From: Macrostomum lignano
Taxonomy: Eukaryota
Assembly: GCA_002269645.1 (NCBI GenBank)
Contig: NIVC01003109.1
Location: forward strand, 1-64,000
Direction: 5' to 3'
DNA: 64,000 bases
A program made the position numbers and the translations under genes. A model generated the notes under the pieces. That model was given only the letters and a program-made list of their open reading frames with translations. It did not search any database and had not been told where the DNA came from. This document shows positions 11,095 to 63,810 of the stretch, in pieces (the stretch's first letter is position 1; each line of letters begins with the position of its first letter).

Positions 11095-11880
11095 CTAAAC
11101 CTGTTTTATACGTAAAATTATTGTTATTGACTGCCCACCAAAACTTATTAATCTATCGCTTTCATCTACAATCCTAATATAAATTGATTGAACACTATAT
11201 TGATTTAAAGGATAATATATTGGGGTTTGAGGCGATACAATCATTTTCTCTCCAATTGGAACAGCAAGAAATGGGATTGAATAAATAATTCCACGTTGAA
11301 CCAAAACTCCGTTATCGTCTGTTATATAACCACCGTTTGAAATGTCGGTTGTTATATTAATTGTATTTACTCCACCCTCTATATTTCCAACTGTATCACC
11401 GGTGCTTGATGTGGTAACTATTCGGGAATTAAATCCAAGTATGGTTCTGAGTGAATTTGCAATTGTGAAATCAACCTGATATCCGGATCCTAGTGATAGT
11501 GTGAATCTGCCAGACGGTAAATCAACACCTATAACAATTGCTCCTGCTACCCAATCACCATTAGTTGTTAATTCTCCTTCTATATAAGCATTCAAATCAG
11601 TATAGCTATACGCTCCTGGGTTAACGCTAAATGTTGTCCAATTGGCTCCGGAATCTTTAGAATATCTAAATTGATTATTTGTTGCATTAATTAATTGAGG
11701 CATGTTGAAAACCGAAAATAGTATTAAACCTATTTGATAACTTAGGCTTTGATCAAGTTGTAATGGATCGCGCAATTGAATCCGTTGCTCGCTGGTTGTC
11801 ATTATAAACTGTAATGTTGTACTAAATTTTGAATTAGTTCGATCTACCAATTGTTTTATAGTATTTAAATTTGTAGTCAT
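11095..11880 (-). CDS. mCP: Minor capsid (penton, single jelly-roll) protein
   Basis: Size, position and motifs (NNQFRY, GAYSY.DLN, PIYYPL...IRIVDE..RLISFGG.SITIILRIK) typical of Polinton pentons. Confidence 0.85.
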   Translation of the reverse strand: MTTNLNTIKQLVDRTNSKFSTTLQFIMTTSEQRIQLRDPLQLDQSLSYQIGLILFSVFNMPQLINATNNQFRYSKDSGANWTTFSVNPGAYSYTDLNAYIEGELTTNGDWVAGAIVIGVDLPSGRFTLSLGSGYQVDFTIANSLRTILGFNSRIVTTSSTGDTVGNIEGGVNTINITTDISNGGYITDDNGVLVQRGIIYSIPFLAVPIGEKMIVSPQTPIYYPLNQYSVQSIYIRIVDESDRLISFGGQSITIILRIKQV

Positions 11881-11904
11881 TTTTATAGTGGGAAATTAAT
11901 CGTG

Positions 11905-12699
11905 CTATGTCTCTTCTTCCTCATTATCTTCTTTTATCAAATTTGTTAAAATTCTATGTTTCCTTTCTAACCTCGGATTGATATAAATATGTTTGTATTG
12001 GCTATCATCCCAAATTTTTTTACACATACTTTTAAATGGTTTTGCGTCCAATCCGGGATTAAATCTAGCGTGTATATTTTGTAAATCATAATTATCTAAA
12101 TCAAACATTACACAACAACTTGCATTCTTTTTTATAATCGATTCTAATTCTCTAAAGGATTGAGTAAGATAAAAAGCTCCAATTCCATCTCCTCTACCAC
12201 TAACAAAAATTTCCTTTTGCAATTCTTGATCACCGTCATTAATACAATCATCAAAAATAATTAGTGTTTTATCATGTTTTGGAATTTGATCATAGGCTAA
12301 TCGGGTTGATACTCTAACAGTTGGGGCTCGATCGGACGAAGTCCGCGACCCTTCGGGGCGATCGGTGATGTTTTCTGGCTGTTGTGCCATTGTTTTACAT
12401 AAATCCTCAATGTCTGCTAGATTAAATCGCGGTTCGTCATCATCCTCATATTGCTCATATGCTCTTAACATTCTAAACAAGACATCTTTTTTTAATTTGT
12501 TTTTTAATCCATGTTTAAGAAATTCATAATATTTTATTCTAGGTTTATTAGTATAAATTATTAAATTATTATAGTCTAACATTCCATCTGTTGTTAATAA
12601 ATCGTAAACAAAGTGTGTTTTTCCTTTACCCGACCCTCCGATTACTAAACAAAGAAAAGGATCATTTGGAAATATTTTATTGTGTTTTGCCTTTACCAT
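11905..12699 (-). CDS. ATP: A32/FtsK-like DNA packaging ATPase
   Basis: Walker A GGSGKGKT, Walker B LIIFDD, SGRG...YLTQ motif. Confidence 0.93.
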   Translation of the reverse strand: MVKAKHNKIFPNDPFLCLVIGGSGKGKTHFVYDLLTTDGMLDYNNLIIYTNKPRIKYYEFLKHGLKNKLKKDVLFRMLRAYEQYEDDDEPRFNLADIEDLCKTMAQQPENITDRPEGSRTSSDRAPTVRVSTRLAYDQIPKHDKTLIIFDDCINDGDQELQKEIFVSGRGDGIGAFYLTQSFRELESIIKKNASCCVMFDLDNYDLQNIHARFNPGLDAKPFKSMCKKIWDDSQYKHIYINPRLERKHRILTNLIKEDNEEEET

Positions 12700-12782
12700 T
12701 TTTAAAGAAATAATTTAAATAGGCGCGACGGTCGGAGACCTGCGCCGCTTACAGCGGGGGCGACGTGCTTTGCACTGCGACA

Positions 12783-14255
12783 CTAAAGTGGCGCGTCCCG
12801 AACAATCGTGCCATCAGCTTTAGCAATTGACATATATTCCTCTAGAAACAATACGTGGGCGTCAAGTGCCTGATTACCGGTTTTATTAATCTCTAACATA
12901 TAATTAAGTCCAATATTGGCTACGTTTTCTTTCTGTGCCGTTAGATCATAAACAACCACTGGATGAATGTTTAGAAACTCTGTGGGTGTATACTGAGGGA
13001 CGGCATACGCTTCATTTTTGGCATAATCTTGATAATATTTTATAAAATCATTAACATTATTATTTGCTATATTTAAATTTAGGGGGTCTTTAACCGGATA
13101 ATATTGATCATCAACCTGCAGGCGGATATTCTGAACATTAAACTCGTTAATAGCTGCAGCCGCATTGTCTGTTGCGGTGGCTGCTTGTTCTGCTATGGCA
13201 CCGGATTGAAGCCAATATAAATCCCCATTTGCTCTTTTACTCCTTCTATTTGTTATCTTAAACCAAACAAAAATATATCTCACCCGACGTTTTGATGTCA
13301 GTATTTGCCACTGGAATGAATCCTGGTTATTATTAATGGTTCGCATAAAATGTCGACGATTCAAATAAAATATTTCCTGATCATGCGTTAACTGATTATC
13401 GATGTGTTTTAAAAGTGGGGCTGTTACCTCAATAGTTGGTACGACTAATTGAATTGAATCTATACGAACTGCTATATCGGTTGAAATTGAGGTTCCATAA
13501 AGTATCCTAGGCTGATATCCACCAGATATTTGCAACTGTATCCCAAATTTTAATCCTTTCCATACCCGATTTGGTGAGAAAAACCCAAATAGTGGAAAGA
13601 TTGAAAAGTCCTGCTCATATGCTGTTGCTGTGGTTAAAACCGCGACTGGGAATTTATTCTGACGATCTATAAAACCAGTATTAATATCTTTTGTATTAGT
13701 CATAGTGGTTACAACTGGAACTATGTTTGTATTAAGGTAAACAATTAGCGCTGCAGTATCTGCACCGGCTGCGTTTTGTACATTAGGGAAAACTACTGCT
13801 TGACCGTTACCTTTATCCGGCATCCACCCAACATTATCACCAACTTGTTTTGATAAATAAGTATAATTTAAATGTTTCAAAACTCCATTAATCTCTGCGG
13901 GGTTTGATGATGTCTCAACCTCAGCACCATTAACAGTTAGTTGAGCTTGGGAAAAACATTTATAAAACCAATCATTTTCTATTATTATTCCGGATCGATC
14001 TGCGATATCTCCGGCTGCAAGAGCAGTTCCATCATTTCTAGTATACAACCATCTAACGCGGAAAAACCCATTTTTCATATCCAATATAGTGTTGGTTGCG
14101 CCGATGTCAAAAGTTACCGTTCCAGTAGTAAAGTTATTTGAATTATCACTTGTTGGTAGGGTATAATTTAAATCTCTTGCTCTGACCTCATTAATATACT
14201 GTCGGTGCTTTTTGAAATGAAATTTATCACTCCACATAGTTTTTGTTTCAGCCAT
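12783..14255 (-). CDS. MCP: Major capsid protein (double jelly-roll), 490 aa
   Basis: Intact beta-rich ORF beside ATPase/penton; FSQAQLTVNG.EVE, RYIFVWF, VVYDLT motifs of Polinton MCPs. Confidence 0.85.
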   Translation of the reverse strand: MAETKTMWSDKFHFKKHRQYINEVRARDLNYTLPTSDNSNNFTTGTVTFDIGATNTILDMKNGFFRVRWLYTRNDGTALAAGDIADRSGIIIENDWFYKCFSQAQLTVNGAEVETSSNPAEINGVLKHLNYTYLSKQVGDNVGWMPDKGNGQAVVFPNVQNAAGADTAALIVYLNTNIVPVVTTMTNTKDINTGFIDRQNKFPVAVLTTATAYEQDFSIFPLFGFFSPNRVWKGLKFGIQLQISGGYQPRILYGTSISTDIAVRIDSIQLVVPTIEVTAPLLKHIDNQLTHDQEIFYLNRRHFMRTINNNQDSFQWQILTSKRRVRYIFVWFKITNRRSKRANGDLYWLQSGAIAEQAATATDNAAAAINEFNVQNIRLQVDDQYYPVKDPLNLNIANNNVNDFIKYYQDYAKNEAYAVPQYTPTEFLNIHPVVVYDLTAQKENVANIGLNYMLEINKTGNQALDAHVLFLEEYMSIAKADGTIVRDAPL

Positions 14256-14289
14256 TTTTTTAAGTTAAAAAAGTTTTTTATGTTAAAAA

Positions 14290-14955
14290 ATGAGTCAATT
14301 TATGGACGTTGATGGAGAGTTAGCGATTTATAAAGAGAAGCAAAGATATTCTGATTTTGTTAGAAATTTACAAAAAAGAAAGTTAGGAATACAATTAGCT
14401 GGTGAAAGATTTGCTGCTCCTTTTGTTAATCCTATTACTGGGAAAATTAGTGAACTAGAAAAAACAGATAAAGATCTTCTGGAAAAAATTGCTAAAAATA
14501 CGGAGCCAAAAGATGAGGAGGATGAGCCGCCTGCTTATGATGTTGATCAAGCGCTATTGAGAGTTGCAGAGATTAGACGTGCAGAACGGGGTGAAGTTGA
14601 TGAATATTCGAGAGCTGCACCAACTAGTATTGCTGTGACAGATTTAGGTAATGATAATTATCGAATTGGTGGGGTTGATAAAAATCGAAATGAACTATAT
14701 AGAGAACTGGGTGGAGCATTTAATATTATTATGAACCCTAGGGTAAAATTTAACCCTGAATTATATACTAGGGATGAATTAGTAAGTGCAAAAATTTTTT
14801 ATGATGAGTTGGGAGTAAGAGCTGCTAAAAATACCAGCTTGTATAAAAGGATTGTTAATTCTATAAATAACAAACCAGCTGTTGGAGAAGGATTTAAAAC
14901 ACCACGAAAACTTGTTTTAGCTGCTGCGAAAGCTGCTGGACATACTGGAGTTTAA
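14290..14955 (+). CDS. Polinton conserved-type hypothetical (possibly PZ-like core) protein, 221 aa
   Basis: Intact ORF; N-terminal helical/basic segment and C-terminal GEGF motif; family assignment uncertain. Confidence 0.55.
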   Translation: MSQFMDVDGELAIYKEKQRYSDFVRNLQKRKLGIQLAGERFAAPFVNPITGKISELEKTDKDLLEKIAKNTEPKDEEDEPPAYDVDQALLRVAEIRRAERGEVDEYSRAAPTSIAVTDLGNDNYRIGGVDKNRNELYRELGGAFNIIMNPRVKFNPELYTRDELVSAKIFYDELGVRAAKNTSLYKRIVNSINNKPAVGEGFKTPRKLVLAAAKAAGHTGV

Positions 14956-14982
14956 TTAATTGTTAAATTTATTTTTTATAAA

Positions 14983-15552
14983 ATGGATGAAACAAAAATT
15001 TGTACTACGTGTAAAATTGAGAAACCGATGACTAAAGAATTTTTTTGTTGGAGAAATGACACAAAAAAATTTAAAAATCTTTGTCGATCTTGTGAGAAAG
15101 TTAAATGTACTATGTGGAGAATAAACAATAAAGATAAATGTAATAAATATGCAAAAAATAAATATCGCACTGATGAAAATTTCAAAAATATTAGTCTAAT
15201 TAGAGCTAAAATAACTTGGGCATTGAGAACTTTTCATGACAAACATTATATCTCCTATCTTGGTTGCACAAAAGAATTCTTTTTTGATTGGTTAAATTTC
15301 ACAAGAAATTATTATGTTCCAAAAAATTATACTGGAAAGTTAGATATTGATCATTTCATTCCCGCTTCTTCATTTAATTACAAAGACGATGATCAGATTA
15401 AAAAGTCTGAAAATTGGAGAAATAAAAGATACTTAACTAGCGTAGATAATAACTATAAAAAAGTTAAACAACCAACAATTGAAGAATTTGCGAAACAATT
15501 GGTGCTATCATGTATTTTTAAGGCTATTAAAAATGAACCAAATAGTGTTTGA
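14983..15552 (+). CDS. Free-standing HNH-type endonuclease with N-terminal Cys4 motif, 189 aa
   Basis: CTTC...CRSC, YLGCT, IDHFIP...N...N pattern resembling NCLDV/phage HNH nucleases. Confidence 0.75.
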   Translation: MDETKICTTCKIEKPMTKEFFCWRNDTKKFKNLCRSCEKVKCTMWRINNKDKCNKYAKNKYRTDENFKNISLIRAKITWALRTFHDKHYISYLGCTKEFFFDWLNFTRNYYVPKNYTGKLDIDHFIPASSFNYKDDDQIKKSENWRNKRYLTSVDNNYKKVKQPTIEEFAKQLVLSCIFKAIKNEPNSV

Positions 15553-17110
15553 AGGAGGATTTTTAGACTTACAAAAAGGATTAACGAGCTTACCACCAAT
15601 CTTTACTACTGGTAAATATACAGGGGAACTACACCTACCATCAATGAACTTCACAGGTTAACCCGTGGCCTGAGTGAGGAAGGCAATGTCCTTGCTAGTC
15701 ACTATTTGTGGCGACATCTCCAAATTGCGTGAAACCCGTCATACAGCTTCAAGTACCACTTCAAGTGAGAAATCTTTTGAAGGAACAGAGGTAACTCCTC
15801 TTCCCAAAGGTAAAAAGCTTGAAGACACGGTGGCAATGCGCAGCCAAGCTCCTAAGTATTTTAAATATAAGGAGAAGGTTCAGAGAGCAGACGGAGATGG
15901 GCGGTAATTATCGCCGCTTAAGGTGTGCTCCAGCCTCTTTCGAAAGATTGAGGGTAAACTACCCGGCACTCGCTTAGATTTAAGATTAAATCCTGACAAT
16001 ACTCCAAAATCTGATTCAATTCCAATAAATGGGATTGATTGGTTAGCATACTATCACGACTTAGCATATAGAGATGCTGACAAGAACCCGCCCGAGGAAG
16101 CATTAAGATTAAAACATGAAGCCGATCAAAAAATGATTCAAGGATTAGATAACTTGCAGGGATTATCGGTAGGTCAAAAATTAACTAGGTGGATGGTTAA
16201 AAAGATCTTGCAGTCTAAAGTTAAATTTGGTTTAGGAATTAATTACAACCAACATGGTAATAATTGTGTCGAATGTTTGTTATTAAGTGGTAGTGGGCTA
16301 AGTTATGATAAGGCTAAGGTTCTTCATAAAGAATATCGAAAACCTAAATTTTATAGAAAAATCATGAACTTCAAAAAGAATGAAATTTGGTATGCTGATT
16401 TAATGTCGATGCCGAACGAAAGAGGATATAAATATATCTTAACCATATTAGATGGTTTTACTCGATACGCGTGGGCTGTTCCTTTAAAATCCAAAAAGGG
16501 AGAGGAGGTTGCTGCTGCTTTTAGAAGTCTTGGAGAAAAAAGCGAACGTTTGTGTGTTGACGAAGGAAAAGAATTTTACAATCCTCATATGTATAAATTA
16601 TATCATTTTGAAAAAGGACAAGAAAGGAAAAAAGACGCGAATGGGGAGTATATTAATAAAATTTATTCTATTTATGGAGAGAGTAAAAACGCATTAATAG
16701 AAAGATTTAATAGAACTTTAGGTAAGAAATTATGGTTTCAGTTTAGTCTTAATGCTAACCAAAAATGGGTAAAAATATTACCAGACGTAGTGAAAGATTA
16801 TAACAATTCATATCATTCAGCTATAAAGATGACTCCTCAACAAGCTTATAACAATCCTGAAAATGTTAGGGTTACTTTTGGAAAATTTGAAAAAAAGAAA
16901 ACTAAAGATTTTAAAGTTGGTGATTCTGTTTATATCTATAAATGGAAAGATAAGTTTGAAAAGGGAAGAAAAGGATATTGGAAGATAAGTGAGAAATTTA
17001 CCATCAGTAAAGTTTTAAATACCAATCCTACAACCTATATAATTGCTGATAAGGACGGTGAAGAAATATTGGGTTCTTTTTATGAAAATCAGATATTATC
17101 TGCAAACTAA
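15533..17110 (+). CDS. INT: PLA2-like domain-retroviral-type DDE integrase fusion, 424 aa; exon 1 15533-15658, exon 2 15962-17110
   Basis: Joining the exons in frame restores ELHLPSMNFTG|PGTRL...PIN..D..AYYHDLAY (parvovirus VP1u-type PLA2); integrase D(WYADL), D(VDEGKEF), E(IERFNRTL). Confidence 0.9.
15659..15961 (+). ncRNA. Group I self-splicing intron, subgroup IC1, 303 nt
   Basis: P1 with U.G at 5' splice site; P2.1; P3 CATCTCC/GGAGATG; P AAATTGCGTGAA; Q AATGCGCAGC; P5abc; P6; R GGTTCAGAGAGCA and S AAGGTGTGCTCC (P7 GAGCA/TGCTC); P8; P9 with GAAA loop; removal restores frame and GPGT motif. Confidence 0.92.
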
Positions 17111-17120
17111 GTTCGATCAG

Positions 17121-17345
17121 TTACTTAAGACAACATGGTAGTAAATTTTTTATAACAAACAAAAACAATATTATTACAATAATTGTTACTAATATTATTA
17201 TTGACATTTGTTCAACTGTTATCAAACTTAAATTTTCATTAAGTTCATTAATCGGCACATTTCCGATATAGGAATAGTTTACCTTCATTTTTTTATATAT
17301 ATTTTTCATAATAAAAGTCGTTTCTGTTATAGAATAATAATTCAT
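17121..17345 (-). CDS. Small single-pass membrane protein, 74 aa
   Basis: C-terminal hydrophobic helix IIILVTIIVIILFLFVI followed by PCCLK; A-rich start context. Confidence 0.5.
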   Translation of the reverse strand: MNYYSITETTFIMKNIYKKMKVNYSYIGNVPINELNENLSLITVEQMSIIILVTIIVIILFLFVIKNLLPCCLK

Positions 17346-17361
17346 TTTTTAAATATTTTTT

Positions 17362-17676
17362 TCACATAAAAATTTCACTTTCATTCTCTGAATCGCTGGT
17401 TTCATATGAACTATTTGTTGATTCGGAATCTGTTGATCTAACCTCCCAATCATCCGAATTTAAATAATCTCCAAGTTGAAATATTAACTCACCCTCTTGT
17501 TCTAAATCATACATCTCATCTAGCTCTAATGGATAAAGTTTTAGGTCGTGCTTGTCATCATATTTTAAATAAACTTCATCAATTATTCCATTCAAAATAT
17601 GTTGTTTTATTATCTCTGCATTTTTAGCAACAGTCTCAAAAGTATCACTAACAGAAAAGGTGTAAACTCGGTTCAT
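17362..17676 (-). CDS. Acidic hypothetical protein, 104 aa
   Basis: ATG in TATAAAAAATG context next to right TIR; D/E/S-rich tail. Confidence 0.55.
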   Translation of the reverse strand: MNRVYTFSVSDTFETVAKNAEIIKQHILNGIIDEVYLKYDDKHDLKLYPLELDEMYDLEQEGELIFQLGDYLNSDDWEVRSTDSESTNSSYETSDSENESEIFM

Positions 17677-17693
17677 TTTTTATAACAGAAAAA

Positions 17694-18014
17694 GACCCTT
17701 CGCGCCTGCGGCGCGTGCGACGGGTTCTAGAAAGTTTGTGTGTGTTGGAGAGAGTTAGAAGCGTTGACGATACAAAATACCCAGCAAACCAAAGCGAGCG
17801 ACGAGGGCGTGTTCTCACCATTCAAAAAGAATTAATCGTTGTAAGTGTGAAATGGCCTGTTTGACCGAAATGAAGCGAGGATGAGCGAAGCGAGTTGAGC
17901 GAAGTGAAGACGAGCGAAAATGAAGGGAAACAGGCCATTTCACACTGATAAAGGGTTAAATTGTTTGCAATGGTGAGAATGGTTTGCTGGGTATTTTGTA
18001 TGGTATATACTACT
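17694..18014 (-). repeat. Right terminal inverted repeat (321 bp)
   Basis: Reverse complement of 519-835 with four extra single bases. Confidence 0.95.
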
Positions 18015-18139
18015 TTTGCCAATGTAACGGAGCTTTTGTCTATGGTAGCAAGGCTGGCACAGCGGCATTTAATTTGGTCCAACAAGCATTAACTTGGTCC
18101 ATAGATTCATTTGCAACTGCTGTGGTGGAGCAAGATTAG

Positions 18140-51587: not shown

Positions 51588-54500
51588 TTACGGCACGAAT
51601 CGATCAGGGGCCCGACGATTTCGCGAGCTTCGGCGCATCGGGTTGTCATTCGGTTGCTCTGGGGCATCCTGCTCATGGGTCGTTGGTGCCTGCTCTTCTC
51701 CGGCCGCCATTTGCATCGGGGGCTGTTGCACAGGCAGATTGTCATTCGCTTCCTCTTCGTCCGCTGTAAGGGCGTCCTGCTGTGGCATTGATGGGGCCAA
51801 CTGATTGGTGCTGGCCAGCTTCAGGCTCTCATCTTCTAAAATCCATGCCGTATTGTGTCCAGCAGTCATTAGAAATGTAGCCTGGCTTCCCTGAGTTGAT
51901 TTCTGCGGCTGGTAGATGACGTTGTCTCCTTGCTCGAACTGTGAGACGACCGGTACACGAAGGCGTCTACCAAGCACCAACTCGGCTGGGCACTGGCCGC
52001 GGCTTCTTGAGGAGTTGCGATGGTGCATGATCACTTTTTGCAGGTAGAATAGGAAATCCATGTGAGTTATTCTCTCCGACCATGCACGCAGCGCTGATTT
52101 AACGGTCTGCACTGCCCTTTCTGCGAGGCCGTTTGCCTGAGCATAGTAGGCGGGTGACTCCATTTTCTTCACTCCATGTGCGCGCAGCCATGCGTTGAGG
52201 CTATCGGCCACAAATTCGGGTGGATTGTCTGACACAACCAGTTCCGGCATACCAAAGCGTGCAAAGACGGCGCAGAGGCACCGCTGGACAGTGCTGGCCA
52301 CTCTGTTTTGGCAGGGAAACGCTTCTATCCAGCCAGAATGAGCGTCAACGATAATCAGTATGTCGCCAGCTCCTCTTACATGCGCCCAGTCCATGTGAAT
52401 GCGTTGGAATGGATAGTCCGGGGCGGGCCATCGATCCCTGTCGTGGCCGACACGCGGTCGTAGGCGGCTGCAGACCGGGCAGCGTTGGACAAATCGTGAC
52501 ACATCCTGTTGCATCCCAGGCCACCAGCAAGACGCTGAAAGCAGGTTGTATGAGGCCTGAATTCCAGAGTGGGTGTCATGGATCGCGTCAAAGGCAGCCC
52601 GGCGCAACCGTGGGGGGATGTAAACCCTCCTCTGCATGTAAAGAAGTCCGTTTTCCAGCGTTAGCTTTTCGGAAACGGCTTTGAAGCTTGACTCTGCCTG
52701 CGAGCAACCTTGCCAATTTCCATTGCGTACTCTTATTAAAATCTTCTGGGTGAACGGGTCTGCGTCCATTTCTGCCAAAATTCTTCCGGCCTCGATCACC
52801 GGCGATTCAAATACCACGACGTTGATAGCATCAAACGTTTCCTTGTCGTCTGCTGAAGGGTGATCAAAGCGGAGCCGAGATAAAGCGTCAGCGTGTGGGA
52901 TGTCGCGGCCTCGCACGTACTCGATGTTGAAGTCAAATTGCATGAGATGCGTAGCTTAGCGCCCGATTCTCGCCGATGTGTTCAGAGGGATGCACCGCGG
53001 AAAAGGCGAGTCAGTGGCTGATGATCTGTCTTGATTGTGAAGTGACGGCCATGAAGGAAGTGCTTCAGTCGAGCGACGGCCCAGAAGATGGCGAGGGCCT
53101 CGCGCTCAATATTTGAATAATTTTATTCGGCGGATGACAGCGTCCTTGATACAAATATTACGGGATGCCCTTCCTGAGTCACTACAGCAGCTATTGAGCT
53201 CTTTGAGGCATCCGTTGTTAGAGTCAGCTCCTTTGATAGGCTATAGGGCTGCACTATTGGCGCAGAGGCGATTTCGGCTTTGAGGTTATTAAAAGCTCGA
53301 GAGCACTCGTCGGTCCAGTCAAAGTTGACGTTGGATTTTCGCAGATGGTTAAGAGGAGCGGTCTTTCGAGCGAAGTTCGGAATCAGTCTCCCAAAGAAGT
53401 TGACTAGTCCCAGAAAGCTCGCGAGCTCAGATTTGTTAGTCGGTGCAGAAACTTGTCTGACTTTTTCAACAAGCCGATCGTCTGGCTGGATTCCGGCGGC
53501 AGAGATCTTGAATCCAAGAAAAGAGATGGAATCGGTGTAGTTGATGCACTTGGACTCGTTGATGGTGACGCGCTTTTCTTGTAGTCGGGTGCGCACCGCG
53601 GCAAGGCGCTTTTCTAGAGTAGCCGCATCTGGTGCGTGCACCAGGATGTCGTCTTGATAAATCAGCAGTCCTTTGATGTCTGACAAAATCGATTCCATAG
53701 TTCTCTGGAAGATGAACGAGGCGTTTTTCATCCCCATTTGCAGTCTGTTTACTCGGTACAGTCCACGCGACGTGTTGATGATAGAGATATCTCTGGCCGC
53801 TTCATCCAGTTCAATTTGCCAGTAGGCCGAGCGGAGGTCGACGGTGGCGAAGACTTTTGCGTTTTTCAAGCGTGAGAAAAGGATTTCTACATTGGGGATC
53901 GGATGCGAGTCGGACTTGATTTTCTCATTCACGTGCAGTGCGCTGTAATCGGCACACGTGCGCAAGGTGCCATCTTTCTTTTTCACCCACACCACGGGCG
54001 ACGCCTTGCTCACGGGTCCCTCGATGGGTTCAATTATTCCTAGCTGTTGCAAGCGGTCGAGTTCGGCGTTAATCTGCCCCTCAATTGCAATAGGCACGGA
54101 TCGAGCACGGCAGAATCTGGGTCTGGCACCGTCAACAACCTCCATGCGAGCTTTCACGCCTTTTATGGTAGGCAGTGGCTCAACTACGCGGGTGTTGTTC
54201 TGGGGCACACTTGTGGTGTTAAAGAGGTCCTCCGCGTCCAACAGATCGCGACCAAGTAAGCCATATGGTTTGCTCGAGTTGACCACAATGAGCTCTGCAG
54301 GGTGCAGATGACCTCGTAGTTCAACCGTGGTTGCCAGCTTTCCGAGTGATTTCATCACGTGACCATCAAAGGCTTCTAGCCGCCGAAAACACTTCTGCAG
54401 CGAGGGTCGACCCAGTCGTTCCCATTGCGAACTGGAGAGCACGGAGACGGAGGCGCCTGTATCGATCTGCATGTCGACGGTCTTGCCATCGATAATAAGT

Positions 54501-55408
54501 GGCTCGGTGGCCACGTTGACAGCGTGGACGGTGCCCACGTCGCTGAGATGCATCAGAGAAGTCTTTTTATGTGGCTCATTGTCTATTTCATGAGCTGATG
54601 GGTCAGTGACTTGGTGCACAGGCCGTGCAGATGATGAGCGACATACACTGGCGAAGTGATTTTTCTTACCACATTTTGAACAGAGCTTGCCAAAAGCCGG
54701 GCATTTTCCTTCCGAATGTGCTTTGCCGCAGTAACGACAGTCCTTGACACTCCGATGTCCATTTTGTCGCTGCGAGTAATGCACAGAGGCTTCGTGTGTT
54801 TGGATTGAAGGAGCTGGCTGAGTCAAATTCGCTTGAAAGTCGCTTGATTTTATGGACACAAAAGCTGTCACCTGCTCTAGGTCGCGAATAAAGTCGACAA
54901 TTTCGAGAACCGACTTGAATGATTTGATTTGAGTGGCTTCCAGAACGCGTTGTTGTTGGTTTACATTGCTGAGCCCAGAAATTAGCGCCATTTGGAGCAA
55001 TTCCTCGAGAGGACTGGTGGATGTCTTCAAATCATCAAACTTACAGTCCTTAGCGGCACGACGAAGTCGGCTAACGAAGTCAGAAATTGATTCATTTGGT
55101 GCTTGTCGCATGGCGAAGAAACGAACGCGTTCAGCGATGACCAGCTTTTCCTTTGGCTTTAGGTACGCCTGCACGGCAGTGTTGATTTCATCAAAAGTCA
55201 GGTCGGTCACGGATTTGGGGGCGATTATGCTTTGTATCTTCTCCGAGGCTGTGAGCCCGCAGTGCGCCAAAAAGTTGTCTGCGATGGTCTTCTTTCCATC
55301 ACTATCAGTCCAGTCCTTTGCTCGGGCCAGCGCTTGGAAGGCAGTCATCCAGGTTTGAGCTCGATCGGGCTTCTCCAGCGGCAGTTCGCCAAGTGACTGC
55401 GACGCCAT
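51588..55408 (-). pseudogene. gag-pol copy 1, broken in RNase H (TAA 53123-53125, frameshift ~53000, TAA 52956-52958)
   Basis: CCHC knuckles, protease IDTGAS, RT YQDD, RH TDAS...EREAL, IN HHCC and D,D35E. Confidence 0.92.
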
Positions 55409-55624
55409 TGTTGTGTTTTGTGCTTTGATTCTGTGCTGAGCCGAAAGCTGTTATAACGAGAGCGTAGCTTAAGTTGAATGTATATTTTATTTAACGATAT
55501 AAGTAACGGCAAGCCTTTATAGAGTCAGAGTCAGTCGGTAGCTGTTTGGGACACAGACAAATAAATTAACGCTGGGGCAACGACTGAAAATAAAAGTACA
55601 TTGGATTCGGATCGGTATACAACA
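55409..55624 (-). repeat. LTR 2 (shared)
   Basis: Copy of LTR 1 at +4201; PBS-like TGGCG follows on minus strand. Confidence 0.92.
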
Positions 55625-55788
55625 TGTCCCCCTTCGAGGGAATGAGAACTGCAACGGAAAAGCGTTGGTGGTTATTGATTAGTGGGTTTGAGTATGAACG
55701 GGTGAGCTTAGGGAGCTTGGTGCTTAACAAAGTAACGGCGAATTCGTTGAAAGTTTGGAATTTAATCAGCGTCTATACTGTTCAGCAA

Positions 55789-58700
55789 TTACGGCACGAA
55801 TCGATCAGGGGCCCGACGATTTCGCGAGCTTCGGCGCATCGGGTTGTCATTCGGTTGCTCTGGGGCATCCTGCTCATGGGTCGTTGGTGCCTGCTCTTCT
55901 CCGGCCGCCATTTGCATCGGGGGCTGTTGCACAGGCAGATTGTCATTCGCTTCCTCTTCGTCCGCTGTAAGGGCGTCCTGCTGTGGCATTGATGGGGCCA
56001 ACTGATTGGTGCTGGCCAGCTTCAGGCTCTCATCTTCTAAAATCCATGCCGTATTGTGTCCAGCAGTCATTAGAAATGTAGCCTGGCTTCCCTGAGTTGA
56101 TTTCTGCGGCTGGTAGATGACGTTGTCTCCTTGCTCGAACTGTGAGACGACCGGTACACGAAGGCGTCTACCAAGCACCAACTCGGCTGGGCACTGGCCG
56201 CGGCTTCTTGAGGAGTTGCGATGGTGCATGATCACTTTTTGCAGGTAGAATAGGAAATCCATGTGAGTTATTCTCTCCGACCATGCACGCAGCGCTGATT
56301 TAACGGTCTGCACTGCCCTTTCTGCGAGGCCGTTTGCCTGAGCATAGTAGGCGGGTGACTCCATTTTCTTCACTCCATGTGCGCGCAGCCATGCGTTGAG
56401 GCTATCGGCCACAAATTCGGGTGGATTGTCTGACACAACCAGTTCCGGCATACCAAAGCGTGCAAAGACGGCGCAGAGGCACCGCTGGACAGTGCTGGCC
56501 ACTCTGTTTTGGCAGGGAAACGCTTCTATCCAGCCAGAATGAGCGTCAACGATAATCAGTATGTCGCCAGCTCCTCTTACATGCGCCCAGTCCATGTGAA
56601 TGCGTTGGAATGGATAGTCCGGGGCGGGCCATCGATCCCTGTCGTGGCCGACACGCGGTCGTAGGCGGCTGCAGACCGGGCAGCGTTGGACAAATCGTGA
56701 CACATCCTGTTGCATCCCAGGCCACCAGCAAGACGCTGAAAGCAGGTTGTATGAGGCCTGAATTCCAGAGTGGGTGTCATGGATCGCGTCAAAGGCAGCC
56801 CGGCGCAACCGTGGGGGGATGTAAACCCTCCTCTGCATGTAAAGAAGTCCGTTTTCCAGCGTTAGCTTTTCGGAAACGGCTTTGAAGCTTGACTCTGCCT
56901 GCGAGCAACCTTGCCAATTTCCATTGCGTACTCTTATTAAAATCTTCTGGGTGAACGGGTCTGCGTCCATTTCTGCCAAAATTCTTCCGGCCTCGATCAC
57001 CGGCGATTCAAATACCACGACGTTGATAGCATCAAACGTTTCCTTGTCGTCTGCTGAAGGGTGATCAAAGCGGAGCCGAGATAAAGCGTCAGCGTGTGGG
57101 ATGTCGCGGCCTCGCACGTACTCGATGTTGAAGTCAAATTGCATGAGATGCGTAGCTTAGCGCCCGATTCTCGCCGATGTGTTCAGAGGGATGCACCGCG
57201 GAAAAGGCGAGTCAGTGGCTGATGATCTGTCTTGATTGTGAAGTGACGGCCATGAAGGAAGTGCTTCAGTCGAGCGACGGCCCAGAAGATGGCGAGGGCC
57301 TCGCGCTCAATATTTGAATAATTTTATTCGGCGGATGACAGCGTCCTTGATACAAATATTACGGGATGCCCTTCCTGAGTCACTACAGCAGCTATTGAGC
57401 TCTTTGAGGCATCCGTTGTTAGAGTCAGCTCCTTTGATAGGCTATAGGGCTGCACTATTGGCGCAGAGGCGATTTCGGCTTTGAGGTTATTAAAAGCTCG
57501 AGAGCACTCGTCGGTCCAGTCAAAGTTGACGTTGGATTTTCGCAGATGGTTAAGAGGAGCGGTCTTTCGAGCGAAGTTCGGAATCAGTCTCCCAAAGAAG
57601 TTGACTAGTCCCAGAAAGCTCGCGAGCTCAGATTTGTTAGTCGGTGCAGAAACTTGTCTGACTTTTTCAACAAGCCGATCGTCTGGCTGGATTCCGGCGG
57701 CAGAGATCTTGAATCCAAGAAAAGAGATGGAATCGGTGTAGTTGATGCACTTGGACTCGTTGATGGTGACGCGCTTTTCTTGTAGTCGGGTGCGCACCGC
57801 GGCAAGGCGCTTTTCTAGAGTAGCCGCATCTGGTGCGTGCACCAGGATGTCGTCTTGATAAATCAGCAGTCCTTTGATGTCTGACAAAATCGATTCCATA
57901 GTTCTCTGGAAGATGAACGAGGCGTTTTTCATCCCCATTTGCAGTCTGTTTACTCGGTACAGTCCACGCGACGTGTTGATGATAGAGATATCTCTGGCCG
58001 CTTCATCCAGTTCAATTTGCCAGTAGGCCGAGCGGAGGTCGACGGTGGCGAAGACTTTTGCGTTTTTCAAGCGTGAGAAAAGGATTTCTACATTGGGGAT
58101 CGGATGCGAGTCGGACTTGATTTTCTCATTCACGTGCAGTGCGCTGTAATCGGCACACGTGCGCAAGGTGCCATCTTTCTTTTTCACCCACACCACGGGC
58201 GACGCCTTGCTCACGGGTCCCTCGATGGGTTCAATTATTCCTAGCTGTTGCAAGCGGTCGAGTTCGGCGTTAATCTGCCCCTCAATTGCAATAGGCACGG
58301 ATCGAGCACGGCAGAATCTGGGTCTGGCACCGTCAACAACCTCCATGCGAGCTTTCACGCCTTTTATGGTAGGCAGTGGCTCAACTACGCGGGTGTTGTT
58401 CTGGGGCACACTTGTGGTGTTAAAGAGGTCCTCCGCGTCCAACAGATCGCGACCAAGTAAGCCATATGGTTTGCTCGAGTTGACCACAATGAGCTCTGCA
58501 GGGTGCAGATGACCTCGTAGTTCAACCGTGGTTGCCAGCTTTCCGAGTGATTTCATCACGTGACCATCAAAGGCTTCTAGCCGCCGAAAACACTTCTGCA
58601 GCGAGGGTCGACCCAGTCGTTCCCATTGCGAACTGGAGAGCACGGAGACGGAGGCGCCTGTATCGATCTGCATGTCGACGGTCTTGCCATCGATAATAAG

Positions 58701-59609
58701 TGGCTCGGTGGCCACGTTGACAGCGTGGACGGTGCCCACGTCGCTGAGATGCATCAGAGAAGTCTTTTTATGTGGCTCATTGTCTATTTCATGAGCTGAT
58801 GGGTCAGTGACTTGGTGCACAGGCCGTGCAGATGATGAGCGACATACACTGGCGAAGTGATTTTTCTTACCACATTTTGAACAGAGCTTGCCAAAAGCCG
58901 GGCATTTTCCTTCCGAATGTGCTTTGCCGCAGTAACGACAGTCCTTGACACTCCGATGTCCATTTTGTCGCTGCGAGTAATGCACAGAGGCTTCGTGTGT
59001 TTGGATTGAAGGAGCTGGCTGAGTCAAATTCGCTTGAAAGTCGCTTGATTTTATGGACACAAAAGCTGTCACCTGCTCTAGGTCGCGAATAAAGTCGACA
59101 ATTTCGAGAACCGACTTGAATGATTTGATTTGAGTGGCTTCCAGAACGCGTTGTTGTTGGTTTACATTGCTGAGCCCAGAAATTAGCGCCATTTGGAGCA
59201 ATTCCTCGAGAGGACTGGTGGATGTCTTCAAATCATCAAACTTACAGTCCTTAGCGGCACGACGAAGTCGGCTAACGAAGTCAGAAATTGATTCATTTGG
59301 TGCTTGTCGCATGGCGAAGAAACGAACGCGTTCAGCGATGACCAGCTTTTCCTTTGGCTTTAGGTACGCCTGCACGGCAGTGTTGATTTCATCAAAAGTC
59401 AGGTCGGTCACGGATTTGGGGGCGATTATGCTTTGTATCTTCTCCGAGGCTGTGAGCCCGCAGTGCGCCAAAAAGTTGTCTGCGATGGTCTTCTTTCCAT
59501 CACTATCAGTCCAGTCCTTTGCTCGGGCCAGCGCTTGGAAGGCAGTCATCCAGGTTTGAGCTCGATCGGGCTTCTCCAGCGGCAGTTCGCCAAGTGACTG
59601 CGACGCCAT
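55789..59609 (-). pseudogene. gag-pol copy 2, same lesions
   Basis: Translated ORFs identical to copy 1. Confidence 0.92.
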
Positions 59610-59825
59610 TGTTGTGTTTTGTGCTTTGATTCTGTGCTGAGCCGAAAGCTGTTATAACGAGAGCGTAGCTTAAGTTGAATGTATATTTTATTTAACGATA
59701 TAAGTAACGGCAAGCCTTTATAGAGTCAGAGTCAGTCGGTAGCTGTTTGGGACACAGACAAATAAATTAACGCTGGGGCAACGACTGAAAATAAAAGTAC
59801 ATTGGATTCGGATCGGTATACAACA
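59610..59825 (-). repeat. LTR 3 (shared)
   Basis: Identical to LTR 2. Confidence 0.92.
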
Positions 59826-59989
59826 TGTCCCCCTTCGAGGGAATGAGAACTGCAACGGAAAAGCGTTGGTGGTTATTGATTAGTGGGTTTGAGTATGAAC
59901 GGGTGAGCTTAGGGAGCTTGGTGCTTAACAAAGTAACGGCGAATTCGTTGAAAGTTTGGAATTTAATCAGCGTCTATACTGTTCAGCAA

Positions 59990-62900
59990 TTACGGCACGA
60001 ATCGATCAGGGGCCCGACGATTTCGCGAGCTTCGGCGCATCGGGTTGTCATTCGGTTGCTCTGGGGCATCCTGCTCATGGGTCGTTGGTGCCTGCTCTTC
60101 TCCGGCCGCCATTTGCATCGGGGGCTGTTGCACAGGCAGATTGTCATTCGCTTCCTCTTCGTCCGCTGTAAGGGCGTCCTGCTGTGGCATTGATGGGGCC
60201 AACTGATTGGTGCTGGCCAGCTTCAGGCTCTCATCTTCTAAAATCCATGCCGTATTGTGTCCAGCAGTCATTAGAAATGTAGCCTGGCTTCCCTGAGTTG
60301 ATTTCTGCGGCTGGTAGATGACGTTGTCTCCTTGCTCGAACTGTGAGACGACCGGTACACGAAGGCGTCTACCAAGCACCAACTCGGCTGGGCACTGGCC
60401 GCGGCTTCTTGAGGAGTTGCGATGGTGCATGATCACTTTTTGCAGGTAGAATAGGAAATCCATGTGAGTTATTCTCTCCGACCATGCACGCAGCGCTGAT
60501 TTAACGGTCTGCACTGCCCTTTCTGCGAGGCCGTTTGCCTGAGCATAGTAGGCGGGTGACTCCATTTTCTTCACTCCATGTGCGCGCAGCCATGCGTTGA
60601 GGCTATCGGCCACAAATTCGGGTGGATTGTCTGACACAACCAGTTCCGGCATACCAAAGCGTGCAAAGACGGCGCAGAGGCACCGCTGGACAGTGCTGGC
60701 CACTCTGTTTTGGCAGGGAAACGCTTCTATCCAGCCAGAATGAGCGTCAACGATAATCAGTATGTCGCCAGCTCCTCTTACATGCGCCCAGTCCATGTGA
60801 ATGCGTTGGAATGGATAGTCCGGGGCGGGCCATCGATCCCTGTCGTGGCCGACACGCGGTCGTAGGCGGCTGCAGACCGGGCAGCGTTGGACAAATCGTG
60901 ACACATCCTGTTGCATCCCAGGCCACCAGCAAGACGCTGAAAGCAGGTTGTATGAGGCCTGAATTCCAGAGTGGGTGTCATGGATCGCGTCAAAGGCAGC
61001 CCGGCGCAACCGTGGGGGGATGTAAACCCTCCTCTGCATGTAAAGAAGTCCGTTTTCCAGCGTTAGCTTTTCGGAAACGGCTTTGAAGCTTGACTCTGCC
61101 TGCGAGCAACCTTGCCAATTTCCATTGCGTACTCTTATTAAAATCTTCTGGGTGAACGGGTCTGCGTCCATTTCTGCCAAAATTCTTCCGGCCTCGATCA
61201 CCGGCGATTCAAATACCACGACGTTGATAGCATCAAACGTTTCCTTGTCGTCTGCTGAAGGGTGATCAAAGCGGAGCCGAGATAAAGCGTCAGCGTGTGG
61301 GATGTCGCGGCCTCGCACGTACTCGATGTTGAAGTCAAATTGCATGAGATGCGTAGCTTAGCGCCCGATTCTCGCCGATGTGTTCAGAGGGATGCACCGC
61401 GGAAAAGGCGAGTCAGTGGCTGATGATCTGTCTTGATTGTGAAGTGACGGCCATGAAGGAAGTGCTTCAGTCGAGCGACGGCCCAGAAGATGGCGAGGGC
61501 CTCGCGCTCAATATTTGAATAATTTTATTCGGCGGATGACAGCGTCCTTGATACAAATATTACGGGATGCCCTTCCTGAGTCACTACAGCAGCTATTGAG
61601 CTCTTTGAGGCATCCGTTGTTAGAGTCAGCTCCTTTGATAGGCTATAGGGCTGCACTATTGGCGCAGAGGCGATTTCGGCTTTGAGGTTATTAAAAGCTC
61701 GAGAGCACTCGTCGGTCCAGTCAAAGTTGACGTTGGATTTTCGCAGATGGTTAAGAGGAGCGGTCTTTCGAGCGAAGTTCGGAATCAGTCTCCCAAAGAA
61801 GTTGACTAGTCCCAGAAAGCTCGCGAGCTCAGATTTGTTAGTCGGTGCAGAAACTTGTCTGACTTTTTCAACAAGCCGATCGTCTGGCTGGATTCCGGCG
61901 GCAGAGATCTTGAATCCAAGAAAAGAGATGGAATCGGTGTAGTTGATGCACTTGGACTCGTTGATGGTGACGCGCTTTTCTTGTAGTCGGGTGCGCACCG
62001 CGGCAAGGCGCTTTTCTAGAGTAGCCGCATCTGGTGCGTGCACCAGGATGTCGTCTTGATAAATCAGCAGTCCTTTGATGTCTGACAAAATCGATTCCAT
62101 AGTTCTCTGGAAGATGAACGAGGCGTTTTTCATCCCCATTTGCAGTCTGTTTACTCGGTACAGTCCACGCGACGTGTTGATGATAGAGATATCTCTGGCC
62201 GCTTCATCCAGTTCAATTTGCCAGTAGGCCGAGCGGAGGTCGACGGTGGCGAAGACTTTTGCGTTTTTCAAGCGTGAGAAAAGGATTTCTACATTGGGGA
62301 TCGGATGCGAGTCGGACTTGATTTTCTCATTCACGTGCAGTGCGCTGTAATCGGCACACGTGCGCAAGGTGCCATCTTTCTTTTTCACCCACACCACGGG
62401 CGACGCCTTGCTCACGGGTCCCTCGATGGGTTCAATTATTCCTAGCTGTTGCAAGCGGTCGAGTTCGGCGTTAATCTGCCCCTCAATTGCAATAGGCACG
62501 GATCGAGCACGGCAGAATCTGGGTCTGGCACCGTCAACAACCTCCATGCGAGCTTTCACGCCTTTTATGGTAGGCAGTGGCTCAACTACGCGGGTGTTGT
62601 TCTGGGGCACACTTGTGGTGTTAAAGAGGTCCTCCGCGTCCAACAGATCGCGACCAAGTAAGCCATATGGTTTGCTCGAGTTGACCACAATGAGCTCTGC
62701 AGGGTGCAGATGACCTCGTAGTTCAACCGTGGTTGCCAGCTTTCCGAGTGATTTCATCACGTGACCATCAAAGGCTTCTAGCCGCCGAAAACACTTCTGC
62801 AGCGAGGGTCGACCCAGTCGTTCCCATTGCGAACTGGAGAGCACGGAGACGGAGGCGCCTGTATCGATCTGCATGTCGACGGTCTTGCCATCGATAATAA

Positions 62901-63810
62901 GTGGCTCGGTGGCCACGTTGACAGCGTGGACGGTGCCCACGTCGCTGAGATGCATCAGAGAAGTCTTTTTATGTGGCTCATTGTCTATTTCATGAGCTGA
63001 TGGGTCAGTGACTTGGTGCACAGGCCGTGCAGATGATGAGCGACATACACTGGCGAAGTGATTTTTCTTACCACATTTTGAACAGAGCTTGCCAAAAGCC
63101 GGGCATTTTCCTTCCGAATGTGCTTTGCCGCAGTAACGACAGTCCTTGACACTCCGATGTCCATTTTGTCGCTGCGAGTAATGCACAGAGGCTTCGTGTG
63201 TTTGGATTGAAGGAGCTGGCTGAGTCAAATTCGCTTGAAAGTCGCTTGATTTTATGGACACAAAAGCTGTCACCTGCTCTAGGTCGCGAATAAAGTCGAC
63301 AATTTCGAGAACCGACTTGAATGATTTGATTTGAGTGGCTTCCAGAACGCGTTGTTGTTGGTTTACATTGCTGAGCCCAGAAATTAGCGCCATTTGGAGC
63401 AATTCCTCGAGAGGACTGGTGGATGTCTTCAAATCATCAAACTTACAGTCCTTAGCGGCACGACGAAGTCGGCTAACGAAGTCAGAAATTGATTCATTTG
63501 GTGCTTGTCGCATGGCGAAGAAACGAACGCGTTCAGCGATGACCAGCTTTTCCTTTGGCTTTAGGTACGCCTGCACGGCAGTGTTGATTTCATCAAAAGT
63601 CAGGTCGGTCACGGATTTGGGGGCGATTATGCTTTGTATCTTCTCCGAGGCTGTGAGCCCGCAGTGCGCCAAAAAGTTGTCTGCGATGGTCTTCTTTCCA
63701 TCACTATCAGTCCAGTCCTTTGCTCGGGCCAGCGCTTGGAAGGCAGTCATCCAGGTTTGAGCTCGATCGGGCTTCTCCAGCGGCAGTTCGCCAAGTGACT
63801 GCGACGCCAT
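59990..63810 (-). pseudogene. gag-pol copy 3, same lesions
   Basis: Translated ORFs identical to copy 1. Confidence 0.92.

What the first reader, a model, noticed from the sequence alone, without database searches (positions are those of the whole stretch)
15926..15966. The intron appears to end in omega-A rather than the near-universal omega-G
Seen: A15932-G15933 right after P7 can pair with C15959-T15960 (P9.0). That places A15961 at the omega position, and only this 3' splice site restores GPGT. The P7 G-C binding pair is canonical. A competing hairpin GGGTA-AAC-TACCC (15952-15964) spans the junction. Using G15965 with a 5' site one base later would give an in-frame but motif-breaking G-C-T. 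Established: omega-G is needed for efficient second-step splicing; as I recall, omega-A is reported in some coral mitochondrial ND5 introns. Inference: a rare functional variant, a G-to-A inactivating mutation in this copy, or a base-call error.
Basis: partly seen in the sequence, partly recalled or inferred. Interest (0 to 1): 0.7.

Follow-up and report, generated by a model that had tools for sequence, protein, structure and literature searches.

The report
Group I intron ending in A
A self-splicing (group I) intron inside the integrase gene of a virus-like element integrated in a eukaryotic genome really does end in A where its six closest relatives, and almost all such introns, end in G. 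This is most likely a private mutation that cripples splicing in this copy, or a sequencing error, rather than a new kind of ribozyme.

Summary
Window 15659-15961 is a genuine group I intron (Rfam RF00028, 62 bits). It interrupts the calcium-loop motif (NFTG|PGT) of a phospholipase-A2-like/rve-integrase gene. The gene lies in a 17.5-kb Polinton-like element (519-18014) with a 6-bp target duplication and ~310-nt terminal repeats. Only the junction T15658|C15962 restores the conserved protein. P1, P9.0 and P10 all point to that junction, so A15961 sits at the omega position. The G-binding pair in P7 (G15885-C15930) is the normal G-C.

New evidence: six independent introns at exactly the same site in related genes from metagenomes all end in G. 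Their P9.0 pairs covary (AG/CU, AC/GU). The A is therefore derived and private to this copy. Nothing in P7 compensates for it.

My reading, from established ribozyme biochemistry, is that 5' cleavage still works but exon ligation is badly impaired. This copy would then make little correct mRNA (about 0.45). The rivals are a tolerated omega-A as in hexacoral ND5-717 (about 0.25) and a base-call error (about 0.2). Reads or RNA would decide. Interest is moderate to low.

The parts
519..18014 (.). Integrated Polinton-like virus / Maverick-type element that carries the intron-bearing gene. It has a 6-bp target-site duplication TTTGCC (513-518 and 18015-20) and ~310-nt terminal inverted repeats.
   Evidence: the TIR arms show 0 substitutions and four 1-nt C indels, and the TSD is identical on both sides; protein-primed PolB (3781-6126) and an A32-like ATPase (11905-12699, - strand). 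The 490-aa ORF at 12783-14255 (-) is my inferred capsid gene, with no significant Pfam match.
15533..15658 (+). Exon 1 of the PLA2-like/rve integrase gene (42 codons, ending ...AAC TTC ACA GGT). U15658 is the -1 nucleotide of the 5' splice site.
   Evidence: Intron-bearing alleles all end in GGT (window, L001, L009, L013). The intronless nearest homologue L042 has GGC|CCA.
15654..15672 (+). P1: C15654-G15672, A15655-U15671, G15656-C15670, G15657-C15669 and the U15658.G15668 wobble at the 5' splice site. In the precursor it extends with U15659.G15667 and A15660-U15666. The loop 15661-15665 carries the P10 guide.
   Evidence: helix 1 is 90% paired, and the U.G wobble is present in all 4 of 4 sequences that cover it.
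15659..15961 (+). Group I intron, 303 nt, with no internal ORF. It starts UAA, which gives an in-frame stop if the intron is not spliced out.
   Evidence: Rfam RF00028 at 62.2 bits. Structure counts on alignment A2: 94.4% of cells paired against at most 48.8% in the slid controls, and 27 pairs with changes on both sides.
15883..15888 (+). P7 5' strand with bulged A15884. G15885 is the guanosine-binding-site G and pairs with C15930.
   Evidence: helix 13: the G-C pair is invariant in 6 of 6, and the flanking pairs covary (3 pairs with double changes).
15927..15931 (+). P7 3' strand (GCUCC).
15932..15933 (+). P9.0 5' strand (A, G). It pairs with U15960 and C15959.
   Evidence: helix 15: the second pair is G-C in 3 sequences, C-G in 2 and U-A in 2. 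The first pair is A-U in 5 of 7.
15934..15953 (+). P9 hairpin closed by a GAAA tetraloop (15942-15945).
   Evidence: helix 16: 91.7% paired, with 3 pairs changed on both sides.
15959..15960 (+). P9.0 3' strand (C, U).
15961..15961 (+). Omega position. It is A here and G in all six introns at the same site (L001, L002, L007, L008, L009, L013).
   Evidence: alignment column 338.
15962..15966 (+). First bases of exon 2 (CCCGG), forming P10 with 15663-15667. The pairs are C15962-G15667, C15964-G15665, G15965-C15664 and G15966-C15663, with one C/U mismatch.
   Evidence: Read directly. The third pair is C-G in the window and A-U in L001 (3' exon CCAGGU with ACCUUG), which is a compensatory change.
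15962..17110 (+). Exon 2: PGTRLD..., the HDLAY catalytic motif of the PLA2-like domain, and the rve integrase core with all invariant residues intact.
   Evidence: PF08398, PF00665; the invariant columns include H74, D75, Y78, D188, D242 and E289.
15952..15964 (+). Window-specific hairpin GGGUA-AAC-UACCC across the 3' splice site. It competes with the last two pairs of P9, with P9.0 and with P10.
   Evidence: It is created by three private differences from L001/L007 (GGGAGAACUG changed to GGGUAAACUA).
14983..15552 (+). Candidate free-standing HNH/EndoVII-like nuclease ORF directly upstream, overlapping the start of exon 1. It is a possible homing partner of the ORF-less intron.
   Evidence: phrog_1035 E 1e-3 and phrog_2255 E 2.7e-3. 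These are weak matches, and Pfam gave none.

Best explanation
The feature is a genuine, structurally intact group I intron. It sits in the Ca-loop codons (G|P of NFTGPGT) of the PLA2-like/integrase gene of a recently integrated Polinton-like element. A15961 occupies the true omega position. Compared with six introns at the same site, it is a derived G-to-A transition found only in this copy.

The guanosine pocket in P7 keeps its G-C pair, so it should not hold an adenine well. The predicted consequence is as follows. The first step (attack by free guanosine after U15658) proceeds. The second step (exon ligation at 15961|15962) is strongly slowed or lost. This copy would then yield little or no correctly spliced integrase mRNA, and unspliced RNA stops at the UAA that opens the intron. 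On this reading the A is a lesion in one copy, not a new ribozyme design.

Shown here: the intron's identity, the junction, the omega position, the G-C pocket, and the derived state of the A. Inferred from published ribozyme work: the effect on the second step.
For: - The intron is real and its fold is conserved, with many compensatory changes.
- Homologues fix the junction at 15658|15962, and the empty site in L042 agrees.
- P9.0 and P10 covary and place omega at 15961 (plus direct reading).
- All six introns at the same site end in G. So does a relative in a giant-virus RNA polymerase gene (L067).
- The P7 pair is G-C in the window as in all relatives, so there is no switch to A-U.
- The nearest G residues give frameshifted, stopped or motif-breaking products.
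- From memory of the primary literature (Price & Cech 1988; Michel et al. 1989; Been & Perrotta 1991): changing omega G to A in Tetrahymena blocks exon ligation unless the P7 G-C pair is also changed to A-U.
Against: - The insertion is very young. The TSD is intact and there are no substitutions in about 2 x 310 nt of TIR. Decay since integration is therefore expected to have touched well under 1% of sites.
- All reading frames and all invariant residues of the host gene are intact.
- The ribozyme shows compensated rather than random divergence.
- A lethal change at one specific base in such a fresh copy is a priori unlikely, unless defective genomes are carried along by helper copies.
- Omega-A introns that do splice exist in hexacoral mitochondria (PMC8146996, PMC4040992).
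Confidence: 0.45

Rival explanations
1. Omega-A is tolerated or functional. The intron still ligates the exons at 15961|15962, either slowly on its own or with help from a host or viral protein. P9.0 and P10 do the positioning, as proposed for the hexacoral ND5-717 intron. The variant was already present in the replicating virus before integration.
For: - The insertion is young and otherwise intact. The A is therefore more likely to predate integration than to result from decay.
- P9.0 (2 bp) and P10 (4 of 5 bp) are both intact and could hold the 3' splice site.
- ND5-717 shows that omega-A, and even omega-C, introns are spliced in vivo.
Against: - The A is not conserved in any relative (0 of 6).
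- This intron family is optional and mobile, not obligatory and host-captured. The nearest homologue L042 has no intron. There is an ORF inside the L001 intron and nuclease ORFs lie next to the others.
- There is no compensating change in the G pocket.
- The private hairpin 15952-15964 would hide the 3' splice site rather than present it.
Confidence: 0.25
2. Base-call or consensus error. The real base at 15961 is G and the intron is ordinary.
For: - All relatives have G.
- The two TIR arms differ only by four single-C indels, three of them in C runs. That pattern looks like residual long-read consensus error, so the assembly may not be error-free.
Against: - The apparent errors in the TIRs are indels, not substitutions.
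- Long ORFs across the element are uninterrupted, which argues for a low overall error rate.
- Two further private substitutions lie 5-6 nt upstream (15955 and 15956). The tail has therefore really diverged.
Confidence: 0.2
3. The intron uses a nearby G as a substitute omega (G15952/15953, G15954 or G15965/15966) and makes an altered protein.
For: [quoted passage not shown]
- G15952 with U15658, or G15953 with U15659, gives in-frame products.
Against: - Those products carry three extra residues (GKL or CKL) or lose one residue in the conserved YxGxG loop, and they score about 10 bits lower.
- The other nearby G residues give stops or frameshifts.
- None of these sites has P9.0 or P10 support.
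- G15952 and G15953 are buried in P9.
Confidence: 0.05

Closest known systems
Group I self-splicing introns (Rfam RF00028), in particular those reported in Polinton-like viruses and giant viruses
   Same: The P1-P10 architecture, the P3/P7 pseudoknot, the U.G wobble at the 5' splice site, the G-C guanosine pocket with a bulged A, and a GAAA L9 loop are all present. The intron sits in a highly conserved coding motif with nuclease ORFs nearby. Rfam hits in PLVs of Rhodomonas lacustris, Paulinella micropora and Desmodesmus were reported in PMC12220804. Relatives with the same P7/J8-7 sequence interrupt giant-virus RNA polymerase genes (L004, L006, L067).
   Different: The last nucleotide is A. 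The host gene and insertion site (PLA2-like Ca loop of the integrase) were not identified in PMC12220804, which describes the host as a short protein of about 50 aa. That description fits an exon 1 called on its own.
Hexacoral mitochondrial ND5-717 group I intron (omega-A, and omega-C in robust corals)
   Same: It is a natural group I intron whose last base is A and that interrupts a protein-coding gene.
   Different: In ND5-717 the omega-A is fixed across a whole animal clade. That intron is obligatory, vertically inherited, thought to depend on host factors, and carries genes in P8. Here the A occurs in one copy only, the relatives have G, the intron is optional or mobile, and the setting is a virus-like nuclear insertion.
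Engineered Tetrahymena omega mutants and the P7 specificity switch (G414A; G264A:C311U), recalled from the literature
   Same: The situation matches the single mutant: omega is A and the pocket is still G-C.
   Different: The compensating A-U pair that restores the second step in the double mutant is absent. No activity data exist for this intron.
Free-standing homing endonuclease plus ORF-less intron ('collaborative homing', described for phage introns; Bonocora & Shub 2009 is cited in PMC11296320)
   Same: The ORF-less intron has an HNH-like ORF immediately upstream in the window, a GIY-YIG ORF upstream in L009 (the matching L013 ORF was read from the sequence only, not scanned), and an ORF inside the intron in L001.
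   Different: The nuclease assignments are weak (E about 1e-3). No cleavage-site evidence exists.

Membership tests
Group I intron (RF00028) | Conserved catalytic core P3-P8 with the P3/P7 pseudoknot, scoring above the curated threshold | tested here: met
   62.2 bits against a gathering score of 50. 74 modelled pairs, 94.4% of cells paired against at most 48.8% in the slid controls, and 27 pairs with compensatory changes.
Group I intron (RF00028) | P1 with a U.G wobble at the 5' splice site | tested here: met
   U15658.G15668. The U.G wobble is present in 4 of 4 introns that include the 5' end. Intron-bearing alleles use GGT, while the intronless L042 uses GGC.
Group I intron (RF00028) | G-C guanosine-binding pair in P7 next to a bulged nucleotide | tested here: met
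   G15885-C15930 with bulged A15884. The pair is G-C in 6 of 6.
Group I intron (RF00028) | Terminal guanosine (omega-G) at the 3' splice site | tested here: not met
   A15961 in the window; G in L001, L002, L007, L008, L009 and L013. This one feature fails. Since omega-A and omega-C members are accepted in the family (ND5-717), I still file the intron as a group I intron.
Group I intron (RF00028) | P9.0 and P10 pairings that define the 3' splice site | tested here: met
   P9.0 covaries: G-C in 3, C-G in 2 and U-A in 2. P10 pairs 4 of 5 positions, with a C-G to A-U exchange between the window and L001.
Group I intron (RF00028) | Self-splicing activity | not testable with these tools
   This needs RNA data or an in vitro assay.
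Host-captured omega-A introns (ND5-717 type) | Omega-A conserved across related introns or hosts | tested here: not met
   0 of 6 introns at the same site carry A.
Host-captured omega-A introns (ND5-717 type) | Obligatory, vertically inherited intron without signs of mobility | tested here: not met
   The closest homologue (71% identical; L042) lacks the intron. Nuclease ORFs lie in or beside the introns.
Adenosine-specific pocket (P7 A-U switch) | A-U in place of the G-C binding pair | tested here: not met
   G15885-C15930.
Polinton / Maverick-like integrated element | TIRs, 6-bp TSD, protein-primed PolB, rve integrase, packaging ATPase, capsid gene | tested here: met
   TIRs, TSD TTTGCC; PF03175, PF00665, PF04665. 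The capsid assignment of 12783-14255 is inferred from its size and position only.

The most novel reading that the evidence does not exclude
A mobile, virus-borne group I intron that completes exon ligation with adenosine at omega while keeping a G-C guanosine pocket. This could happen through strong P9.0/P10 positioning, through a protein helper, or, if the host is an animal, through A-to-I editing of omega within the private hairpin (inosine mimics G). It would be the first functional non-G omega outside hexacoral mitochondria, and it would sit in a nuclear, integrated Maverick-like element.
Probability: 0.2. Interest if true: 0.65.

Novelty: new member of a known kind. Interest (0 to 1): 0.33.

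Why it matters
If the A is real and the exons are still joined, this would be a second, independent natural case of a group I intron working without its terminal guanosine. It would occur in a small, tractable 303-nt ribozyme that has G-omega sister sequences available as built-in controls. That would be useful for asking how much of 3' splice-site choice P9.0 and P10 can carry.

If the A is a lesion or an error, as I think more likely, the finding itself is ordinary. The work still defines something useful: a family of group I introns that target the Ca-loop codons of the PLA2-like/integrase gene of Polinton-like viruses. These introns share their core with introns in giant-virus RNA polymerase genes. 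A published survey appears to have recorded exon 1 as a separate gene for a short protein.

Tried and rejected
- Whole-window Rfam scan at gathering threshold found nothing. The intron appeared only with the laxer filters. No second group I intron is in the window, so there is no sister copy to compare within it.
- The single metagenome scan, with a 20-nt P7'-P9 pattern, gave two chance matches only (L011, L012). The same pattern found nothing in viral contigs.
- The 14-nt J8/7-P7' pattern gave 85 loci, of which only 5 passed my filter for intron core motifs; L062 passed on one chance motif only, and L067 was the only new intron.
- The protein-guided scan of viral contigs gave 29 loci, only one of which (L013) had the intron.
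- L010 (P0025) looked like an intron-bearing allele. It is in fact a deletion with a frameshift across the insertion site.
- Spliceosomal removal was considered and rejected on reading the sequence. No GT...AG pair restores GPGT.
- The 5' splice site after U15659, which has a second adjacent U.G wobble, was rejected. L009 and L013 have only one U there, and the protein requires GGT|CCC.
- The window's own proteins are not in the protein collection, so no identical contigs could be fetched to check the base independently.
- The upstream ORFs of L042 and of the window are unrelated.

Full report
**What is there**

Window 15649-15952 (+) matches the Rfam group I intron model RF00028 at 62.2 bits (gathering score 50, E 3.6e-15). 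The default fast filters missed it in the whole-window scan.

The intron splits an ORF. Its upstream part runs from ATG 15533 to ...AAC TTC ACA GGT at 15658. Its downstream part (CCC GGC ACT... from 15962 to 17110) joins to it to give a 424-residue protein. This protein has a parvovirus-type phospholipase-A2-like domain (PF08398) and an rve integrase core (PF00665).

A database search found 359 homologues. In the 36 aligned homologues that span the junction, the motif H-N-F/Y-T-G-P-G-T-R-L-D is conserved across it. All invariant residues are present in the window protein, including HD..Y of the PLA2 site and the D, D, E of the integrase.

**The splice junction**

I enumerated every in-frame, stop-free combination of a 5' end (15652-15663) and a 3' start (15940-15981). 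Each was scored against an HMM built from the intronless homologues only.
- The best peptide (NFTGPGTRLD, 147.6 bits) comes from 15658|15962, with U at -1 and A at omega.
- The only tie is 15657|15961, which is non-canonical at both ends.

The closest homologue (P0001, 71% identical, locus L042) has no intron and reads TTT ACT GGC|CCA GGA ACT at the site. All intron-bearing alleles have GGT there, which supplies the U for the U.G wobble.

**RNA structure**

I aligned the window intron with six other introns found at exactly this site (alignment A2) and wrote out P1-P9.0.
- Of 341 pair cells, 94.4% are standard pairs, against 36.5-48.8% when partners are slid by 1-3 columns.
- 27 of 74 pairs show changes on both sides.
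- P1 is C15654-G15672 through the U15658.G15668 wobble.
- P7 is G15883-C15931, bulged A15884, G15885-C15930 (the guanosine-binding pair, G-C in 6 of 6), A15886-U15929, G15887-C15928 and C15888-G15927.
- Directly after P7, A15932-G15933 pair with U15960 and C15959 (P9.0). The inner pair is G-C in three introns, C-G in two and U-A in two. The outer pair is A-U in five of seven.
- P9 (15934-15953) ends in a GAAA tetraloop.
- The first exon-2 bases CCCGG (15962-15966) pair with 15663-15667 in the P1 loop (P10). The third P10 pair is C-G here and A-U in L001.

Protein homology, P1, P9.0 and P10 thus agree on the junction. A15961 is the omega nucleotide.

**Sister introns**

The same-site introns and their 3' ends are:
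- L001 (ENA ERZ28573525): ...GAGAACTG|CCAGGT
- L007 (Logan SRR23617216): ...GAGAACTG|CCAGGT
- L002 (ERZ5540419): ...CCACTAAGTG|CCAGGA
- L008 (ERZ27248453): ...GGTGTGTG|CCTAAC
- L009 (ERZ3602260): ...GTGAAAAG|CCGTTC
- L013 (IMG/VR 3300027939_000003): ...GTGAAAAG|CCTTTC

. All six end in G. A relative with the same P7'-P9.0 sequence in a giant-virus RNA polymerase gene also ends ...CTG|TTTGACGGAGACGAG (L067).

The window intron is about 80% identical to L001 and L007. It differs from its relatives at 22 of 122 otherwise invariant columns. Most of these lie in peripheral hairpins or are compensated, for example in P3, P4 and P5c, and P8 is shortened. The lineage has therefore evolved as a working ribozyme. 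The omega change is one of its private differences, and nothing in P7 compensates for it.

**Context**

The gene lies in a 17.5-kb element (519-18014). It is flanked by identical TTTGCC target-site duplications and bounded by terminal inverted repeats of about 310 nt. The repeats show no substitutions and four single-C indels, three of them in C runs. The element encodes a protein-primed PolB and an A32-like ATPase, together with a 490-residue ORF that I take to be the capsid gene. It is therefore a young, apparently intact Polinton-like or Maverick-type insertion.

To its right lie skewed repeats and three tandem Ty3/gypsy-like units. The best named relative of their pol is from the flatworm Macrostomum lignano, at 68% identity. 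The host may therefore be an animal, but this is not established. For that reason I did not print or assemble the element.

**Mechanism and alternatives**

According to the published ribozyme work as I recall it, the terminal G occupies the P7 pocket in the second step. Changing it to A in Tetrahymena blocks exon ligation unless the G-C pocket pair is also changed to A-U. Here the pocket is G-C.

The best-supported prediction is therefore that 5' cleavage occurs but ligation at 15961|15962 is strongly impaired. Unspliced RNA stops at the UAA that opens the intron. Nearby G residues give stops, frameshifts or a disrupted Ca loop.

The private hairpin 15952-15964 (-5.6 kcal/mol; z -2.0; absent in L001 at -1.5) would compete with P9, P9.0 and P10. 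Statistically it is unremarkable.

Several facts argue against simple decay. The insertion is very young and otherwise intact, so a post-integration hit on this one base is a priori improbable. The A could instead have been carried by the virus, either tolerated or complemented by helper copies. Hexacoral ND5-717 shows that omega-A, and even omega-C, introns can be spliced in vivo (PMC8146996, PMC4040992). That intron, however, is obligatory and its A is clade-wide, unlike here.

The homopolymer-type indels in the TIRs hint at residual consensus errors, so a miscall cannot be excluded.

My weights are:
- lesion or hypomorph: 0.45
- tolerated omega-A: 0.25
- base-call error: 0.20
- cryptic 3' site: 0.05

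**Comparison with what is known**

Group I introns in Polinton-like viruses have been listed from Rfam scans of Rhodomonas lacustris, Paulinella micropora and Desmodesmus. They were described as lying in a gene for a protein of about 50 aa upstream of the capsid gene (PMC12220804). That description fits exon 1 here. The actual host gene and insertion site do not seem to have been recognised.

The intron passes every membership test for group I except the terminal G. It fails the tests for the ND5-717 type (conserved A, obligatory) and for an adenosine-specific pocket.

**Verdict**

The A is derived and private to this copy. It is most likely a crippling change or an error. Reads, sister copies in the same genome, or RNA would settle the question quickly.

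Noticed in passing
window 513-18020: Complete Polinton-like/Maverick-type insertion (519-18014) with a 6-bp TSD TTTGCC and ~310-nt TIRs. The two arms differ by no substitutions but by four single-C indels, three in C runs. These may be consensus errors or real differences.
   Followed up: partly
window 14983-15552 (+); L009 2208-2549; L013 ~1725-2066; L001 776-1477: Nuclease-like ORFs accompany the same-site introns. The window has an HNH/EndoVII-like ORF that overlaps the start of exon 1 (PHROG E about 1e-3). L009 has a GIY-YIG ORF upstream (Pfam hit), and L013 has a matching ORF read from the sequence but not scanned. L001 has a 233-aa ORF inside the intron (weak Eco47II-like hit). This suggests homing, partly by free-standing enzymes.
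   Followed up: partly
L004 (1-240, - strand), L006 (700-1000), L067 (~540-760), L003 (four RF00028 hits 130-4472): Introns with the same J6/7-P7 and J8/7-P7' sequences interrupt the GDEMN catalytic motif region of giant-virus RNA polymerase largest-subunit genes. One 49-kb viral contig carries four group I introns. This suggests intron exchange between giant viruses and the small viruses that accompany them.
   Followed up: partly
window 15649-15952: The Rfam scan of the whole window at gathering threshold reported nothing, although the intron scores 12 bits above the threshold. It appears only with the more permissive filters. Group I introns in AT-rich viral DNA may be under-called by default scans.
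   Followed up: yes
literature: PMC12220804: The published survey describes PLV group I introns as lying in a gene for a ~50-aa protein upstream of the capsid gene. Here the 42-codon exon 1 would look exactly like that if exon 2 (PLA2-like/integrase) is not joined to it.
   Followed up: no
window 51588-63810: Three tandem ~4.2-kb units, each with a 761-aa protease/RT/RNase H ORF and a 451-aa integrase ORF (Ty3/gypsy-like). The best named relative is from the flatworm Macrostomum lignano (68%), which hints at an animal host.
   Followed up: partly
window 22000-32000: Region with extreme strand composition bias: GC skew rises to 0.99 at 28-30 kb, and AT skew reaches 0.56 at 20-22 kb. It is probably satellite or simple repeats.
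   Followed up: no
window 41066-41209 and 41978-42103: Sub-threshold matches on both strands to several unrelated microRNA precursor models. This is typical of long perfect inverted repeats or hairpins rather than real miRNA genes.
   Followed up: no
L010 1290-1320: A related PLA2-like/integrase gene (P0025) carries a deletion with a frameshift that removes the stretch from ...GFIW to just before GTRLD. That stretch contains the intron insertion site.
   Followed up: no
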